This document shows, piece by piece, positions 17,531 to 38,443 of a DNA stretch of 64,000 bases. Position numbers and translations under genes: made by a program. The stretch spans positions 62,001 through 126,000 of the forward strand of contig NW_025767210.1 in assembly GCF_003918875.1 (NCBI RefSeq). The letters run 5' to 3'. The number at the start of each line of letters is the position of its first letter. Position 1 is the first letter of the stretch. This DNA is from Haliotis rubra. Lineage: Eukaryota. A model generated the notes under the pieces. That model saw only the letters and a program-made list of their open reading frames with translations. It made no database searches and was not told the DNA's origin.

Positions 17531-19069
17531 ATGCCAACGATGCAGTGGCTTGCATTTATACTTGTTCCTGTGGTGCTTGCCAGGAAGAATGTTCTGTTTC
17601 TCATTTCGGATGACATGCGGCCAAACCTTGGGGCATATCTTGGTCCTGACTTCCCTTCGCCTGTCTATCCAACAATGCACACACCTACTCTTGATGCATT
17701 AGCCAAGCGGAGTCTGCTCCTCAAGAGAGCCTATGTTTCCCAAGCACTTTGCAATCCAAGCAGAACAGCCCTTCTTACGAGTAGGAGACCCGATACAAGC
17801 CACATCTACGCCATCGGCCCTTACTTCAGGAAATATGGAGGAAACTTTACCACTCTGCCAGAGTACTTCAAGCAGAATGGCTACAGGACAATAGGGATGG
17901 GGAAGGTGTTCCATCCAGGGTCGTCTTCGGGTAATGATGATCCTGTGTCATGGACAGACCCGTATTTTCATGCACACGCTCATTATAAGGGAGATCATCG
18001 CAGTTGGACAGCTGTGCCTGAGGAAAGAGTAGCACAGCAACCTCTTGGAGACACCCTGCTGGCTGACAATGCAATAAAGGTTCTGCAAGATGTGGCGCCG
18101 AAAGCTAAGTCAGGTGAGCAACCTTTCTTTGTGGCGGTTGGACTTCACAAACCTCATCTTCCCTGGAATTTTCCAGCTCGTTTTATGGACTATTACCCTC
18201 TTGAGAATATTAGACCTCCTCCTAATTATTTTGCACCAGTGGGGATGCCCACAGTTGCTTGGCACAACTTCAGTAAATTTGCTGGATTCAAGGACATTAA
18301 GTCGCTCGGGTTAAAAGACATTGGAAATATCAATTTTACCTTTCCGCATAACCTTACTCTAGAGTTAAGAAGGGCATACTACAGCTGTATGAGTTTCGTA
18401 GACTACGAACTTGGCAGAGTAATAGTTGAGCTTGACAATCTTGGCCTGTCAGACAACACTATCATATCCTTCTGGGGAGACCATGGGTGGCAGCTTGGGG
18501 AACATAGTGAATGGCAGAAGCAAACAAACTTTGAGGATGCTACCCATGCTCCCATGATGATTCACATCCCAGGACTCACCGACCAGGGGATCGTCACAGA
18601 ACAGTTAACAGAATTTGTGGATCTCTTTCCAACACTTGCTGAAGCTGCAGAACTTCCTAAGATCGAGACATGTCCTGACAATTCGCAAAATGTTACCCTG
18701 TGTACAGAAGGACTCAGTCTGATGCCTCTTGTGAAGAATCCAAATACAACATTGAAGACTGCAGCCTTCTCCCAGTATCCCAATGAAAATGATGGAGACC
18801 CTCTGACGGGCAAAGCTGTGATGGGTTATACCATGAGAACAGACTCATATCGTTACACAGAATGGGTCAAGTTTACTGGTGGTAAGAAGTTCGTTACCCA
18901 CTGGAATAAGTTGGTTGCTGCAGAGCTTTACGATCATACCGTGGATCCACAGGAAAACTACAATCAAGCATTAAATGCTACCTATGCTAACATCAGGAAG
19001 GAGCTTAGTGCCAAGCTACAGGCTGGATGGAGAAAGGCAATGCCTGTCGGAGAAACGCTAAGCCATTAA
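17531..19069 (+). CDS. IDS: Iduronate-2-sulfatase-like sulfatase, copy 1 (intronless, signal peptide)
   Basis: N-terminal hydrophobic signal; SDDMRP metal-binding motif; CNPSR formylglycine motif; GKVFHPG, HKPHLP, GDHGWQLGEH, MGYTMRT..YRYTEW, ELYD...DP.E, all collinear with animal IDS. Start is placed at the ATG shared by all copies. Confidence 0.92.
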   Translation: MPTMQWLAFILVPVVLARKNVLFLISDDMRPNLGAYLGPDFPSPVYPTMHTPTLDALAKRSLLLKRAYVSQALCNPSRTALLTSRRPDTSHIYAIGPYFRKYGGNFTTLPEYFKQNGYRTIGMGKVFHPGSSSGNDDPVSWTDPYFHAHAHYKGDHRSWTAVPEERVAQQPLGDTLLADNAIKVLQDVAPKAKSGEQPFFVAVGLHKPHLPWNFPARFMDYYPLENIRPPPNYFAPVGMPTVAWHNFSKFAGFKDIKSLGLKDIGNINFTFPHNLTLELRRAYYSCMSFVDYELGRVIVELDNLGLSDNTIISFWGDHGWQLGEHSEWQKQTNFEDATHAPMMIHIPGLTDQGIVTEQLTEFVDLFPTLAEAAELPKIETCPDNSQNVTLCTEGLSLMPLVKNPNTTLKTAAFSQYPNENDGDPLTGKAVMGYTMRTDSYRYTEWVKFTGGKKFVTHWNKLVAAELYDHTVDPQENYNQALNATYANIRKELSAKLQAGWRKAMPVGETLSH

Positions 19070-19100
19070 GGAAATATCACATGTAAAGGTATATGGATTG

Positions 19101-19106
19101 AATAAA
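19101..19106 (+). terminator. Polyadenylation signal of copy 1 (equivalents at 23443-23448 and 34308-34313)
   Basis: AATAAA 32 bp after the stop, followed by T-rich sequence; absent at the same position after copy 4. Confidence 0.55.
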
Positions 19107-35395: not shown

Positions 35396-35480
<85 letters not shown>

Positions 35481-36910
35481 CCCATTCACAGCTAGGTGGA
35501 CTTGGACACATAGTCACAGAACTTTGTCCACGTTTACTGCACGTTGCTCTACCCGCAACTAGGTGTTTGCACGTTTACATCTGGCTACCATCTGGTCATT
35601 TACTGACGGATTCGTATGTTCTTGTAAGTGCACAGGGTTGTGTACTGTACACTAGGGATTGTAACAACACTAAAAGAATTTGCACACAAAGTTGTTTTCA
35701 GGGTTTTTGCACCCTTTACATGGGCTCGATTCCGGCACCTCAAGCTCGCTAGATCAGTAGCCAGGCGCCTTAGCCAGCTCGCCCTTGCTAAATGTCATCA
35801 AGCAGGTCACTGACTCTGACCATGTGATCCATTAAGTCGTCTTGGTTACGTGGAACCAATGGGAAACCGGGAGTCCCCACACGCTAGAAGCAGTGTTTAT
35901 TATTTGAACACTCTAAGTAAAAGTGAAAAAAGAACCCATTCCACAATCACAGAGAAGTCCATTGAACTATCATAGCCTTATCGTATCTTTGACAGTGAAT
36001 GGACTACATTGCAAATGTTGTGGACAGTCATACATGACTGAAACCTGTCGACATACGCCATGTAGAACGATTAGGATACAGGCCCTCCATCTAGAAGGCC
36101 GACTTGAGGTCAGGTCTTTCAGAACATTTCAACAACACTCCCAGCAACCTTGACTAAGTCACTGGATCAAGTTCAACCTCTGAGACGCTATTCACATCTG
36201 TGCAACCATCAGTTTCTTAGTTTTTCCCAGTTAATGTTAAACAGAATACATACGCTTTACGTTCTGCTCTATGAACTCTTTCTATAGATTCCGCAAACAC
36301 TGGAATAATCCATTGTACGTAACATTACCTTTCACCACACAACAACTAATATGTATTCCCAATCATTCACATGGAGATGAGTTAAGATGCGGCACTGAAG
36401 ATGTGTTTGTAAAATGTAAAGGTTGTTATCCATAATACTCCTTGTAATTATTATGTCCAATTTGTTGAGTTCATATAGGGGTGACAAATGCAAATCATAC
36501 ATTTAATCATACTCAGATTATTTTAAAAATTAAAACCTTCAGAAGATTTGTGGTTGAACCTACTATTTGATGGTATTCTAAGAATTACATTCTTACTGTA
36601 TTGCGTGTGAAAAAGGACTTCTGTCTTTTGTTATCAGGTATACTAAGGCCTAATCTTTTACATAACAATATATAACCAGGTCTGAGAATGTACATGTGTG
36701 CCATTCGCTCATTTGGCCTTTCAGACAAAATTCCAAGCAAGCCTATCTGCTGGTGATAACCACATATTTGTCGCTAATGCAAACGTCATTCCGTTCTGTA
36801 AATGTGTATCGTGATTGAGATAAAAATGGAATGTCTAGGTTCCTAAATGCACCAGATCCTATCAGTATAAAACAAATCCTCTAGGGCTTGGTTATACCAT
36901 TCCGATTTCC

Positions 36911-38443
36911 ATGCCAACGATGCAGTGGCTTGCGCTTCTCCTTCTTCCAGTGGTGCTTGCCAGGAAAAATGTTCTGTTTCTCGTTTCGGATGATATGCGG
37001 CCAAACCTTGGGGCATATCTTGGTCCTGACTTCCCTTCGCCTGTCTATCCAACAATGCAGACACCTACTCTTGATGCATTAGCCCAGCGGAGTTTGCTCC
37101 TCAAGAGAGCCTATGTTTCCCAAGCACTTTGCAATCCAAGCAGAACGGCCCTTCTTACGAGTAGGAGACCCGATACAAGCCACATCTACTCCATCGGCCC
37201 TTACTTCAGGAAATATGGAGGAAACTTTACCACTCTGCCAGGGTACTTCAAGCAGAATGGCTACAGGACAATAGGGATGGGGAAGGTGTTCCACCCAGGG
37301 TCGTCTTCGGGTAATGATGATCCTGTGTCATGGACAGACCCGTATTTTCATGCACCGGATAAATATAAGGGAGATGATCTCATTTGGGAAGCCGTGTCTG
37401 AGGAAAGAGAAGCACAGCAACCTCTTCAAGACACCCTGCTGGCTGACAATGCAATAAAGGTTCTGCAAGATGTGGCCCCGAATGCTAAGTCAGGTGAGCA
37501 ACCTTTCTTTGTGGCGGTTGGACTTCACAAACCTCATCTTCCCTGGAATTTTCCAGCTCGTTTTATGGACTATTACCCTCTTGAGAATATTAGACCTCCT
37601 CCTAATTATTTTGCACCAGTGGGAATGCCCACAGTTGCTTGGCACAACTTTACTAACATGGGTCTGTTTAAGAACATTAAGCCACTTGGGTTAAAAGACG
37701 TTGGAAATATCAATTTTACCTTTCCGCATAACGTTACCCTAGAGTTAAGAAGGGCATACTACAGCTGTATGAGTTTCACAGACTACGAACTTGGCAGAGT
37801 AATAGCTGAGCTTGACAATCTTGGCCTGTCAGACAACACTATCATATCCTTCTGGGGAGACCATGGGTGGCAGCTTGGGGAACATAGTGAATGGGAGAAG
37901 CAAACAAACTTTGAGGATGCTACCCATGCTCCCATGATGATTCACATCCCAGGACTCACCGACCAGGGGATCGTCACAGAACAGTTCACAGAATTTGTGG
38001 ACCTCTTTCCAACACTTGCTGAAGCTGCAGAACTTCCTAAAATCGAGACATGTCCTGACAATTCGCAAAATGTTACCCTGTGTACAGAAGGACTCAGTCT
38101 GATGCCTCTTGTGAAGAATCCAAATACAACATTGAAGACTGCAGCCTTCTCCCAGTATCCCAGAGATGGCGATCCTCTGACGGGCAAAGCTGTGATGGGT
38201 TACACCATGAGAACAGACTCATATCGCTACACAGAATGGGTCAAGTTTACTGGTGGTAAGAAGTTCGTTACCCACTGGAATAAGTTGGTTGCTGCAGAGC
38301 TTTACGATCATACCGTGGATCCACAGGAAAACTACAATCAAGCATTGAATGCTACCTATGCTAACATCAGGAAGGAGCTTAGTGCCAAGCTACAGGCTGG
38401 GTGGAGAAAGGCAATGCCTGTCGGAGAAACGCTAAGCCATTAA
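36911..38443 (+). CDS. IDS: Iduronate-2-sulfatase-like sulfatase, copy 4
   Basis: 510-aa intact ORF with the same catalytic motifs. Confidence 0.92.
   Translation: MPTMQWLALLLLPVVLARKNVLFLVSDDMRPNLGAYLGPDFPSPVYPTMQTPTLDALAQRSLLLKRAYVSQALCNPSRTALLTSRRPDTSHIYSIGPYFRKYGGNFTTLPGYFKQNGYRTIGMGKVFHPGSSSGNDDPVSWTDPYFHAPDKYKGDDLIWEAVSEEREAQQPLQDTLLADNAIKVLQDVAPNAKSGEQPFFVAVGLHKPHLPWNFPARFMDYYPLENIRPPPNYFAPVGMPTVAWHNFTNMGLFKNIKPLGLKDVGNINFTFPHNVTLELRRAYYSCMSFTDYELGRVIAELDNLGLSDNTIISFWGDHGWQLGEHSEWEKQTNFEDATHAPMMIHIPGLTDQGIVTEQFTEFVDLFPTLAEAAELPKIETCPDNSQNVTLCTEGLSLMPLVKNPNTTLKTAAFSQYPRDGDPLTGKAVMGYTMRTDSYRYTEWVKFTGGKKFVTHWNKLVAAELYDHTVDPQENYNQALNATYANIRKELSAKLQAGWRKAMPVGETLSH

What the first reader, a model, noticed from the sequence alone, without database searches (positions are those of the whole stretch)
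17531..38443. Tandem array of four secreted IDS-like sulfatases with hypervariable predicted substrate-pocket loops: a candidate diversifying toolkit for sulfated glycans
Seen: four intact ORFs are nearly identical over long stretches, including synonymous sites and non-coding spacers, yet changes cluster in two short segments. Loop 1 reads HAHAHYKGDHRSWTA / HAPNNYVIDHLSWEA / HAPDKYARDHLIWQA / HAPDKYKGDDLIWEA. Loop 2 reads NFSKFAGFKD / NFSKLVRFKD / NFTNMGRYKN / NFTNMGLFKN. There are also switches next to catalytic residues (HKPH/HRPH, EWQK/EWEK). Catalytic motifs (DD, CxPSR, GK..H, DHG, K) are invariant. Knowledge: IDS is normally a single-copy lysosomal gene in vertebrates, and by alignment these segments appear to match the human IDS loops around Y165-N167 and R273 that line the substrate cleft. 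Inference: the paralogs are under diversifying selection for different sulfated substrates. In an algae-grazing mollusc these could be dietary polysaccharides (ulvan, carrageenan, fucoidan) rather than heparan/dermatan sulfate.
Basis: partly seen in the sequence, partly recalled or inferred. Interest (0 to 1): 0.85.

Follow-up and report, generated by a model that had tools for sequence, protein, structure and literature searches.

The report
Abalone sulfatase paralogs with diverged substrate loops
An abalone carries four side-by-side, nearly identical copies of an intron-free sulfate-removing enzyme gene that differ mainly in the short loops predicted to hold the sugar substrate, which suggests recently duplicated enzymes being retuned to different sulfated sugars, though no substrate has been tested.

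Summary
Four intact intronless ORFs (S1 to S4, 510-512 aa) lie in about 4.3-kb tandem units that are 93-98% identical, spacers included. All are formylglycine-type sulfatases closest to human IDS and to an S1_7 ulvan sulfatase, and all ten catalytic residues are invariant.

Two other abalone genomes have one copy at the syntenic place, so the array is a lineage-specific amplification.

Paralog differences pile up in three patches (codons 149-160, 248-255, 417-420). By alignment these correspond to the human IDS segments carrying the docked-substrate contacts N167, D269/R273 and K479.

In a codon set fixed in advance from those human contacts, omega is 4.0 on array branches and 0.10 in the single-copy orthologues (p=4e-10). 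The loop result survives a multi-nucleotide-mutation model. Under the most extreme gene-conversion scenario, omega in that set drops to about 1.

The copies are mosaics from gene conversion or unequal exchange. An S1-type mRNA with a poly(A) tail exists.

The human iduronate-contact residues are not conserved, so these are IDS-like enzymes, not IDS proper. The dietary-algal role is plausible but untested.

The scan has already noted similar intronless sulfatase arrays elsewhere in this genome. Insect glucosinolate sulfatases are a published analogue.

The parts
16904..21261 (+). Repeat unit 1: promoter, gene S1 and spacer
   Evidence: Self-blastn gives 95.3% identity to unit 2 over 3.3 kb. The 5' flank is the most divergent of the four units.
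17531..19069 (+). S1 coding sequence, 512 aa, intronless. It has the most derived loops. TATAAA at 17485, AATAAA at 19101, poly(A) site about 19118.
   Evidence: An RNA contig ending in poly(A) plus Illumina adapter stops at 19118.
21262..25407 (+). Repeat unit 2
   Evidence: Self-blastn.
21873..23411 (+). S2 coding sequence, 512 aa. TATAAA at 21828, AATAAA at 23443.
   Evidence: The best solved relative is human IDS 5fql, E 3.6e-91.
31941..36107 (+). Repeat unit 3
   Evidence: Self-blastn gives 96.4% identity to unit 2.
32744..34276 (+). S3 coding sequence, 510 aa. Its loops are nearly ancestral (like H. asinina). TATAAA at 32699, AATAAA at 34308.
   Evidence: Per-copy loop omega is 0.37.
36108..38456 (+). 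Repeat unit 4. Its homology to the other units ends 13 nt after the S4 stop codon.
   Evidence: Self-blastn. The 3' flank is replaced.
36911..38443 (+). S4 coding sequence, 510 aa. TATAAA at 36866. No AATAAA or ATTAAA within 750 nt after the stop.
17975..18010 (+). Variable patch 1 in S1, codons 149-160. The same codons lie at 22317-22352 in S2, 33188-33223 in S3 and 37355-37390 in S4. It aligns with human IDS 161-172, which includes N167.
   Evidence: Sites 153 and 154 have posterior above 0.9 for omega above 1.
18272..18295 (+). Variable patch 2 in S1, codons 248-255. The same codons lie at 22614-22637 in S2, 33485-33508 in S3 and 37652-37675 in S4. It aligns with human IDS 268-275, which includes D269 and R273.
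   Evidence: Site 252 has posterior 0.95.
18779..18790 (+). Variable patch 3 in S1, codons 417-420 (PNEN). S2 has the same at 23121-23132. S3 and S4 have a 2-codon shorter form (H/P then R) at 33992-33997 and 38159-38164. The patch lies immediately before the residue aligned with human K479.
17750..17764 (+). C74-N-P-S-R78 formylglycine motif of S1, identical in all four copies
   Evidence: The motif is defined in PMC5472762.
25408..31943 (.). Low-GC insertion that splits the array between units 2 and 3. It is not part of the sulfatase system.
   Evidence: There is a gap in unit homology here and GC is 0.32. An earlier scan note calls it a Harbinger transposon; I did not test that.

Best explanation
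A single intronless gene for a formylglycine-dependent sulfatase of the IDS-like (S1_7-type) family was amplified to four tandem copies in this abalone lineage (most likely the blacklip abalone). Relatives have only one copy, nested antisense inside a discoidin-domain gene.

The copies keep being partly homogenised by gene conversion or unequal exchange. The catalytic core, promoter and spacers therefore stay 93-98% identical.

Three short segments that line the predicted substrate cleft have been driven apart by selection. They are equivalent to the human IDS loops carrying N167, D269/R273 and K479, plus the residues beside H226 and K347.

S3 keeps the ancestral cleft, S4 is intermediate, and S1 and S2 are strongly remodelled, including their charge.

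The likely result is four exo-sulfatases with the same chemistry (FGly, Ca2+, sulfate-ester hydrolysis) but different preferences for the sugar that carries the sulfate.

Shown here: the gene structure, the lineage-specific amplification, the mosaicism, the cleft-specific acceleration and a polyadenylated transcript of an S1-type copy. Inferred: that selection rather than mutation bias caused the divergence, that the loops set specificity, and what the substrates are.
For: Family and fold:
- Pfam Sulfatase plus SGSH_C.
- Best sequence hits are human IDS (E 3.6e-91) and then 6hhm.
- The AlphaFold model has pLDDT 89.9. Its Foldseek top hits are IDS (TM 0.83, 35% identity) and then the S1_7 ulvan sulfatase.

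Amplification:
- H. asinina and H. cracherodii have one intronless copy at the colinear site.

Mosaicism:
- Three blocks carry three incompatible partitions; PHI-like test p<5e-5.

Acceleration:
- Loops are 17-42% divergent at nucleotide level, against 0-8% in the adjacent flanks.
- M7/M8 p=1.6e-4 and M1a/M2a p=0.002.
- With branch times fixed from the rest of the gene, loop omega is 7.8 on array branches and 0.18 in the outgroups. With multi-nucleotide rates free it is 6.1, p=1e-8.
- The a-priori cleft set gives omega 4.0 against 0.10, p=4e-10.
- 17 of 34 cleft codons vary among paralogs against 27 of 470 elsewhere (p=3e-11). Between the orthologues there is no enrichment (p=0.8).

Expression and reality of the copies:
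- An 894-nt contig ends in poly(A) at 19118, downstream of the AATAAA at 19101.
- DNA contigs from two other samples and a second organism label carry the S1 patch 2 and both S2 loop patches.
Against: - The local synonymous estimate inside the loops is also high (NG86 dS 0.13-1.2 on about 12 sites), so loop omega from local dS is about 1.
- If every copy is taken to be as old as the split from H. asinina (complete homogenisation elsewhere), the a-priori set gives omega 0.84-1.15, not significant.
- The cleft mapping rests on a 35%-identity alignment and on docking, not on a substrate complex. No model coordinates were available to measure distances.
- There are only four paralogs and two outgroups, and recombination is known to inflate site tests.
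- The codon-likelihood code is my own, not PAML.
- The transcript comes from the second organism label, and its tissue is unknown.
- No enzymology was done.
Confidence: 0.65

Rival explanations
1. Relaxed constraint plus concerted evolution. The duplicates are old. Gene conversion keeps most of each unit alike, and the cleft loops have simply drifted because redundancy removed constraint, with no adaptive divergence.
For: There is clear mosaicism. Under the maximum-age star tree the a-priori cleft set has omega about 1. These loops are also the most variable regions family-wide.
Against: Neutral loops would be converted together with their flanks, yet the adjacent 60-nt flanks are 0-8% divergent while the loops are 17-42%. 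Loop omega for S1 (5.5) and S2 (2.8) exceeds 1 even at maximum age. Conserved codons inside the loops carry no excess of purely synonymous change. S3 keeps the ancestral loops under constraint (omega 0.37).
Confidence: 0.15
2. Mutational origin. The loop sequences were written in by ectopic micro-conversion from divergent paralogs, or by clustered multi-nucleotide mutation. The dN excess would then reflect mutation input. Selection may or may not have followed.
For: Several codons differ at two or three positions. S1 and S4 share AAG GGA at codons 153-154, five changes from the ancestral GCT AAA, against the flanking genealogy. Some S1/S2 states return to the family consensus (S158, D255). Ectopic conversion diversifies insect glucosinolate sulfatases (bioRxiv 10.64898/2026.10.12.758433).
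Against: None of 125 retrieved family proteins has the S1 or S2 loop sequences. A database search restricted to S1 residues 143-185 found no protein sharing them. Omega stays at 6.1 with free double- and triple-nucleotide rates. However, the rest of this genome could not be searched.
Confidence: 0.12
3. Ordinary lysosomal turnover of glycosaminoglycans. The enzymes would act on the animal's own heparan, dermatan or chondroitin-like sulfates, not on food, and the paralogs would cover endogenous sulfation variants.
For: The closest characterised relative is lysosomal IDS. A signal peptide is equally expected for a lysosomal enzyme. Mollusc digestive-gland sulfatases are discussed as lysosomal (PMC5549309).
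Against: The iduronate-contact residues R273 and Y348 are replaced. The single-copy orthologues are under strong constraint, while the amplification is species-lineage specific, which suits a changing external substrate better. S1_7 includes ulvan and carrageenan sulfatases. In molluscs, lysosomal and digestive roles overlap, so this rival is not exclusive.
Confidence: 0.3
4. Assembly artefact. Some of the four copies are haplotypes or a falsely expanded repeat.
For: The assembly comes from a highly heterozygous species and needed haplotig purging (PMC6774278). Contig depth cannot give a copy number.
Against: Four distinct sequences cannot be two haplotypes. The most different pair is S1-S3, not what alleles of a two-gene unit would show. 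The flanks are not duplicated and are colinear with H. asinina on both sides. Short-read contigs from three DNA runs cover the S1-to-S2 spacer and the copy-specific loops.
Confidence: 0.03

Closest known systems
Human iduronate-2-sulfatase (IDS; PDB 5fql, 6ioz), SulfAtlas subfamily S1_7
   Same: Same fold (TM 0.83) and about 35% identity. Same CxPSR formylglycine motif and the same ten active-site residues, including the unusual His after the second metal Asp (D317-H318, equivalent to D334-H335). An N-terminal signal peptide is present in both.
   Different: These genes are intronless and tandemly amplified. The docked-iduronate contacts are replaced: R273 by F/Y253, Y348 by Q331, and the K479 loop is shortened. 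The C171-C184 loop region is 8 residues shorter. They belong to an invertebrate family whose members are 55-64% identical from sponges to molluscs, well above their identity to IDS.
FA22070, the S1_7 ulvan-specific sulfatase of Formosa agariphila (PDB 6hhm), and other polyspecific S1_7 members
   Same: It is the second-best solved relative by sequence (E 8e-54) and by fold (TM 0.75-0.83). It shows that the IDS-type scaffold can act on algal sulfated polysaccharides (PMC9825549).
   Different: Identity is only 28%. It is bacterial. The closest bacterial genomic relatives of the abalone genes are at most 38% identical, so there is no sign of recent transfer.
Glucosinolate sulfatases of Plutella moths (duplicated arylsulfatase-like genes)
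   Same: Clustered sulfatase duplicates in a herbivore, with positive selection after duplication, gene conversion among the copies, and distinct substrate spectra linked to diet (PMC6501874; bioRxiv 10.64898/2026.10.12.758433).
   Different: A different sulfatase subfamily and phylum. There the substrates and activities were measured; here they were not.
Other intronless sulfatase arrays in the same abalone genome (earlier scan notes) and the scallop ARSB expansion
   Same: Tandem, intronless sulfatases with signal peptides and variable pocket segments. Scallop arylsulfatase B expansion has been proposed as an adaptation to algal food (PMC5159873).
   Different: This array is small and young, and it has single-copy orthologues in two other abalones. 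That allows a clean comparison of paralogs against orthologues.

Membership tests
Type I formylglycine-dependent sulfatases (SulfAtlas S1, Pfam PF00884) | Match to the sulfatase domain profile above the curated cut-off | tested here: met
   PF00884 scores 154-160 bits against a cut-off of 25 in all four copies. PF16347 SGSH_C also matches.
Type I formylglycine-dependent sulfatases (SulfAtlas S1, Pfam PF00884) | C-x-P-S-R formylglycine motif and the conserved metal and sulfate-binding residues | tested here: met
   C74-N-P-S-R78, D27, D28, K125, H128, H209, D317, H318 and K330 are invariant in the four copies and in 108 relatives. They align to D45, D46, C84, R88, K135, H138, H229, D334, H335 and K347 of IDS.
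Type I formylglycine-dependent sulfatases (SulfAtlas S1, Pfam PF00884) | Two-subdomain alkaline-phosphatase-like fold | tested here: met
   AlphaFold model with pLDDT 89.9 and pTM 0.92. All 50 top Foldseek hits are sulfatases or phosphonate monoester hydrolases.
SulfAtlas subfamily S1_7 | Assignment by the SulfAtlas subfamily HMM or phylogeny | not testable with these tools
   No SulfAtlas profiles were on hand. Indirectly, the two best solved relatives, IDS and FA22070, are both S1_7.
Iduronate-2-sulfatase proper (orthologue of human IDS, EC 3.1.6.13) | Conservation of the residues that hold 2-sulfo-iduronate in the docked human enzyme (R273, N167, Y348, K479) | tested here: not met
   By alignment, R273 corresponds to F/F/Y/F at 253, Y348 to Q331, N167 to D155, and K479 to a G422 region in a loop that is 7 residues shorter. 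The loop alignments are uncertain by a few residues; the Y348 position is certain.
Iduronate-2-sulfatase proper (orthologue of human IDS, EC 3.1.6.13) | One-to-one orthology with vertebrate IDS | tested here: inconclusive
   There are many paralogs per mollusc genome, and they are 55-64% identical across phyla against about 35% to human IDS. An earlier scan note calls the family a sister of IDS. I built no tree that includes true IDS sequences.
Iduronate-2-sulfatase proper (orthologue of human IDS, EC 3.1.6.13) | Hydrolysis of the 2-sulfate of iduronate in heparan or dermatan sulfate | not testable with these tools
   Needs an enzyme assay.
Diet-linked diversifying sulfatase duplicates (Plutella GSS type, 'concerted neofunctionalization') | Clustered duplicates with gene conversion among them | tested here: met
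   Four tandem units. Blockwise incompatible partitions, p<5e-5.
Diet-linked diversifying sulfatase duplicates (Plutella GSS type, 'concerted neofunctionalization') | Positive selection after duplication | tested here: inconclusive
   Strongly supported if the copies are as young as their synonymous and spacer divergence suggests. Not significant for the a-priori set under the extreme maximum-age bound.
Diet-linked diversifying sulfatase duplicates (Plutella GSS type, 'concerted neofunctionalization') | Different substrate spectra of the copies and diet-related expression | not testable with these tools
   The only expression evidence is a polyadenylated S1-type transcript in one run of unknown tissue.

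The most novel reading that the evidence does not exclude
The four paralogs would be an animal-encoded set of S1_7 sulfatases that act on dietary algal polysaccharides (for example ulvan, carrageenan or fucoidan fragments). Each remodelled cleft would take a different sulfated sugar. Gene conversion would shuffle loop modules among the copies (such as the KG dipeptide codons shared by S1 and S4) to generate new specificities quickly. These would be the first animal enzymes of the IDS type shown to desulfate algal glycans.
Probability: 0.25. Interest if true: 0.7.

Novelty: new member of a known kind. Interest (0 to 1): 0.5.

Why it matters
How marine grazers remove the abundant sulfate esters from seaweed polysaccharides is poorly known, and the work is usually credited to gut bacteria. 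One abalone microbiota survey found that the dominant gut genera carry few sulfatases (PMC5870069). Host-encoded sulfatase families are therefore candidates for this role.

This array is a compact test case:
- four enzymes with an identical catalytic core;
- differences concentrated in about 25 cleft residues;
- an ancestral-like copy (S3) and single-copy orthologues to serve as controls.

Loop-swap experiments on it could show which residues set sugar specificity in the IDS/S1_7 scaffold. That is also of interest for engineering sulfatases and for understanding substrate recognition in the human disease enzyme.

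Tried and rejected
- Recent bacterial origin of the intronless genes: rejected. 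The best of 66 bacterial loci is 38% identical, no closer than human IDS.
- A donor paralog for the S1/S2 loops: none found among 125 family proteins. A region-restricted database search gave only 2 word-sharing candidates, neither significant. That search is weak, and the rest of the genome was not available.
- Loops as old islands in a homogenised gene: not rejected outright, but the sharp boundaries and the absence of extra purely synonymous changes at conserved loop codons argue against a neutral version.
- Distances from the variable residues to the FGly in the AlphaFold model: could not be measured, because the model coordinates are not exposed to scripts. The mapping therefore rests on alignment to human IDS.
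- RNA runs: none is on record as RNA for this stretch. Expression rests on one small run whose contig carries poly(A) and an adapter. Tissue and copy-specific levels could not be obtained.
- Literature searches for IDS-like sulfatase expansions in abalone or gastropods found nothing specific.

Full report
**What is there**

The region holds four intact ORFs on the + strand:
- S1: 17531-19069, 512 aa
- S2: 21873-23411, 512 aa
- S3: 32744-34276, 510 aa
- S4: 36911-38443, 510 aa

Each covers a complete sulfatase with no intron. It runs from a hydrophobic N-terminal signal-type segment (a helix at residues 2-15 in the model) to the C-terminus.

The genes sit in tandem units of about 4.3 kb: 16904-21261, 21262-25407, 31941-36107, and 36108 onwards. 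The units are 92.6-97.6% identical over promoter, gene and spacer. A 6.5-kb low-GC insertion at 25408-31943 separates units 2 and 3. An earlier scan note reads it as a Harbinger transposon.

Every copy has TATAAA 45 nt upstream of its ATG. S1 to S3 have AATAAA 32 nt after the stop. The native 3' flank of S4 is replaced 13 nt after its stop, and no poly(A) signal follows within 750 nt.

**What the proteins are**

- All four match Pfam Sulfatase (154-160 bits) and SGSH_C.
- The best solved relatives by sequence are human iduronate-2-sulfatase (5fql and 6ioz, E about 4e-91) and then 6hhm.
- An AlphaFold model of S1 (pLDDT 89.9, pTM 0.92) matches IDS at TM 0.83 and 35% identity. It then matches the S1_7 ulvan-specific sulfatase FA22070 at TM 0.75-0.83 and 28% identity.
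- The ten IDS active-site residues listed in PMC5472762 align to D27, D28, C74, R78, K125, H128, H209, D317, H318 and K330. These are invariant in the four copies and in a 108-member family alignment.

The catalytic chemistry is therefore that of a formylglycine, Ca2+-dependent sulfate-ester hydrolase.

**Which organism and family**

The four proteins are already in public databases. They are identical to P0121-P0124 apart from a start codon placed three residues later, and they sit on an 803-kb contig. Earlier notes of this scan name the genome as blacklip abalone, Haliotis rubra. This fits the scaffold-level contig sizes and the assembly paper (PMC6774278).

The family is large in lophotrochozoans. 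Several paralogs each are seen in H. asinina, H. cracherodii, H. rubra, H. rufescens, Patella, Lottia, Pinctada and others. Members in sponges and annelids are 55-64% identical.

Bacterial relatives are at most 38% identical, so nothing points to recent transfer.

The contrast with 'single-copy IDS' applies to vertebrates only. These are IDS-like enzymes rather than IDS. The residues that hydrogen-bond the docked 2-sulfo-iduronate in the human enzyme (R273, N167, Y348, K479) correspond here to F/Y253, D155, Q331 and a shortened G422 loop.

**Origin of the array**

H. asinina (L001) and H. cracherodii (L002) each have one intronless orthologue (91% and 82% protein identity to S2). In both it lies inside the span of an antisense F5/F8-type-C (discoidin) gene.

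L001 is colinear with the window on both sides of the array (window 3399-13529 and 40032-55101). It has a single gene where the window has four. The array is therefore a lineage-specific tandem amplification.

The outgroup joins the gene tree next to S3 and S4, and S1 plus S2 form a derived pair.

The units are mosaics. Informative sites fall into blocks:
- grouping 13|24 in the promoter (17108-17411);
- grouping 14|23 in the first half of the gene (17571-18151);
- grouping 12|34 in the second half (18244-19027).

A PHI-like permutation test gives p<5e-5. Gene conversion or unequal exchange has clearly acted.

**Where the differences are**

Of 46 amino-acid-variable columns, 16 lie in codons 149-160 and 248-255. 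Four more form a third patch at 417-420 that includes a two-codon indel.

| Comparison | Loops | Adjacent 60-nt flanks | Whole gene |
|---|---|---|---|
| Between paralogs | 17-42% | 0-8% | 2-3% |
| H. asinina vs H. cracherodii | 11-25% | 10-27% | 17% |

These are nucleotide divergences. Between the two single-copy orthologues the loops are unremarkable.

With the outgroups as reference, S3 keeps nearly ancestral loops, S4 is intermediate, and S1 and S2 are heavily remodelled. Net charge in patches 1 and 2 ranges from about -1 (S4) to +2 plus four histidines (S1), read directly.

Family-wide, patch 1 is the most variable 10-residue window of the mature protein. The patch 3 region is second and patch 2 is sixth.

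**Mapping to the cleft**

By the HMMER alignment to 5fql (chain index plus 25 gives the human residue number):
- patch 1 corresponds to human 161-172, which includes N167;
- patch 2 corresponds to 268-275, which includes D269 and R273;
- patch 3 lies immediately before the residue aligned with K479;
- K/R207 corresponds to K227, between H226 and H229;
- Q/E329 corresponds to A346, next to K347 and Y348.

PMC5472762 reports that docked 2-sulfo-iduronate bonds to R273, N167, Y348 and K479. It also reports that H226, K479 and K135 contact the +1 sugar, and that K479 and D269 are flexible.

**Selection tests**

Pairwise NG86 values are dS 0.046-0.090 and omega 0.19-0.55 for the whole gene, and omega 0.16-0.36 outside the loops.

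I wrote a GY94/F3x4 likelihood program and ran it on the four copies plus both outgroups (504 codons). Site-model results:
- M1a vs M2a: 2dlnL 12.2, p=0.002
- M7 vs M8: 2dlnL 17.4, p=1.6e-4
- M8a vs M8: 2dlnL 13.5, p=2e-4
- About 1% of sites have omega about 10. Sites 153, 154 and 252 have posterior above 0.9 under M8.

Recombination and multi-nucleotide changes can mislead such tests, so I added three controls.

1. Branch times and kappa were fixed from the rest of the gene. Loop omega is then 7.8 on array branches and 0.18 on outgroup branches (LRT against 1 = 81). It is 6.1 with free double- and triple-nucleotide rates (LRT 32.7, p=1e-8).
2. A codon set was chosen in advance from the human structure: plus or minus 3 residues around the equivalents of N167, D269, R273, Y348, K479 and H226, giving 34 alignable codons.
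   - Omega is 4.0 on array branches and 0.10 in the outgroups (p=4e-10).
   - 17 of 34 such codons vary among the paralogs, against 27 of 470 elsewhere (odds 16, p=3e-11).
   - Between the orthologues the figures are 4 of 34 against 68 of 470 (odds 0.8, p=0.8).
3. An extreme bound treats every copy as being as old as the split from H. asinina.
   - The post-hoc loops still give omega 2.1 (p=2e-5), or 1.7 (p=0.025) with multi-nucleotide rates.
   - Per copy, omega is S1 5.5, S2 2.8, S3 0.37 and S4 1.0.
   - The a-priori set falls to 0.84-1.15, not different from 1.

**How I read this**

A tenfold or greater, paralog-specific and cleft-specific acceleration is solid.

It amounts to positive selection in the strict sense if the copies are about as young as their synonymous and spacer divergence indicates.

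If conversion has erased older divergence, dN/dS alone cannot separate selection from full relaxation. A neutral loop, however, would be converted along with its flanks. The sharp 30-40-nt islands next to identical flanks imply selection against homogenisation in that scenario too.

The apparent synonymous excess in the loops is confined to codons that also changed their amino acid. Purely synonymous columns are not enriched: 2 of 23 against 30 of 489.

A mutational contribution remains possible. S1 and S4 share the codons AAG GGA at 153-154, five changes from the ancestral GCT AAA and against the flanking genealogy. This looks like a micro-conversion of a loop module. No outside donor was found, but the rest of the genome could not be searched.

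**Expression and reality of the copies**

A small run under a second organism label (33 Mb, run X8) gave an 894-nt contig at depth 190. It lies on 18249-19118 with three differences and ends in poly(A) followed by Illumina adapter, 17 nt after the AATAAA. It carries the S1-type patches 2 and 3. An S1-type gene is therefore transcribed and polyadenylated. A second low-depth contig from X8 covers patch 1 of S1.

DNA contigs from two samples of the best-matching organism, and from the second organism, cover patch 2 of S1, patches 1 and 2 of S2, and the S1-to-S2 spacer.

Some individuals carry the S3 state (K131) in an S2-type context at 22263-22264, which suggests ongoing exchange.

Four distinct sequences, unduplicated flanks and the S1-S3 pair being the most divergent all argue against a haplotype artefact. 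Copy number by depth could not be assessed from contigs.

**Comparison with what is known**

The enzymes work like S1_7 sulfatases, but they fail the residue test for IDS proper.

SulfAtlas describes S1_7 as polyspecific: iduronate 2-sulfatase, endo-4S-kappa-carrageenan sulfatase and ulvan xylose-2-sulfatase (PMC9825549). An algal substrate is therefore chemically plausible, but it is untested.

The evolutionary pattern has a close published analogue in the glucosinolate sulfatases of Plutella moths. These are clustered duplicates with positive selection, conversion among copies and distinct substrate spectra (PMC6501874; bioRxiv 10.64898/2026.10.12.758433). Scallop arylsulfatase B expansion has also been linked to algal food (PMC5159873).

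This scan has already noted other intronless sulfatase arrays in the same genome. They include an 11-gene IDS-like cluster and an ARSB-like array reported as under diversifying selection. I found no paper on IDS-like arrays in abalone.

**Verdict**

This is a real, annotated four-gene array. The new element is the well-controlled evidence that its predicted substrate cleft, and little else, has been remodelled since a recent amplification. It is a good experimental system of a known kind rather than a new kind of system.

Noticed in passing
window 25408-31943: A 6.5-kb low-GC (0.32) insertion splits the array between units 2 and 3. An earlier scan note calls it an intact Harbinger transposon. 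I confirmed only the boundaries, from the break in unit homology.
   Followed up: partly
window 20286-20683: The spacer of unit 1 contains a very high-copy repeat. Summed contig word depth is about 1e4 to 2e5 in three DNA runs, against 20-600 around it. Many contigs break there.
   Followed up: no
window 38457-40032: The native 3' UTR of S4 is replaced 13 nt after the stop, starting with a (CATCA)n-like run. There is no poly(A) signal within 750 nt. Part of the replacement (38788-39140) recurs several times, in both orientations, in the H. cracherodii locus L002, so it is probably a mobile element. Positions 39462-40032 resemble the other units' spacers at only 66-77% identity.
   Followed up: partly
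L001 1-15824 and L002 1-21575 (minus strand): In both outgroup abalones the single sulfatase gene lies inside the span of an antisense gene with F5/F8-type-C (discoidin) and weak CBM_14 hits. The array therefore probably sits in an intron of that gene. I did not map the host exons in the window.
   Followed up: no
window 22263-22264: Contigs from another individual (X4) and from the second organism label (X3) read AA instead of TC. This turns S131 of the S2-type copy into K, the S3 state. It suggests polymorphic gene conversion or extra copies in other individuals.
   Followed up: no
window 17987-17992 and 37367-37372: S1 and S4, which are not neighbours, share the identical codons AAG GGA (K153 G154). 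These differ at five of six bases from the ancestral GCT AAA kept in S3-like form. This points to a micro-conversion of under 20 nt inside patch 1.
   Followed up: partly
window 18266-18274 (S1 codons 246-248) and equivalents: An N-x-S/T sequon (N246-F-S or N246-F-T) at the start of patch 2 is kept in all copies although the third residue switches between S and T. This hints at a conserved N-glycan at the rim of the cleft.
   Followed up: no
window 53163-54840, 63104-63709 and 43174-43668: Tandem-repeat arrays: a minisatellite with copies offset by about 30 nt at 53.2-54.8 kb, an array with an ~84-nt period at 63.1-63.7 kb, and a stretch at 43.2-43.7 kb that matches a ~30/60-nt periodic array in L002.
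   Followed up: no
window 50113-52366: Four runs of N (156-581 nt) in a region with very low apparent GC. These are assembly gaps or masked stretches and were left untouched.
   Followed up: no
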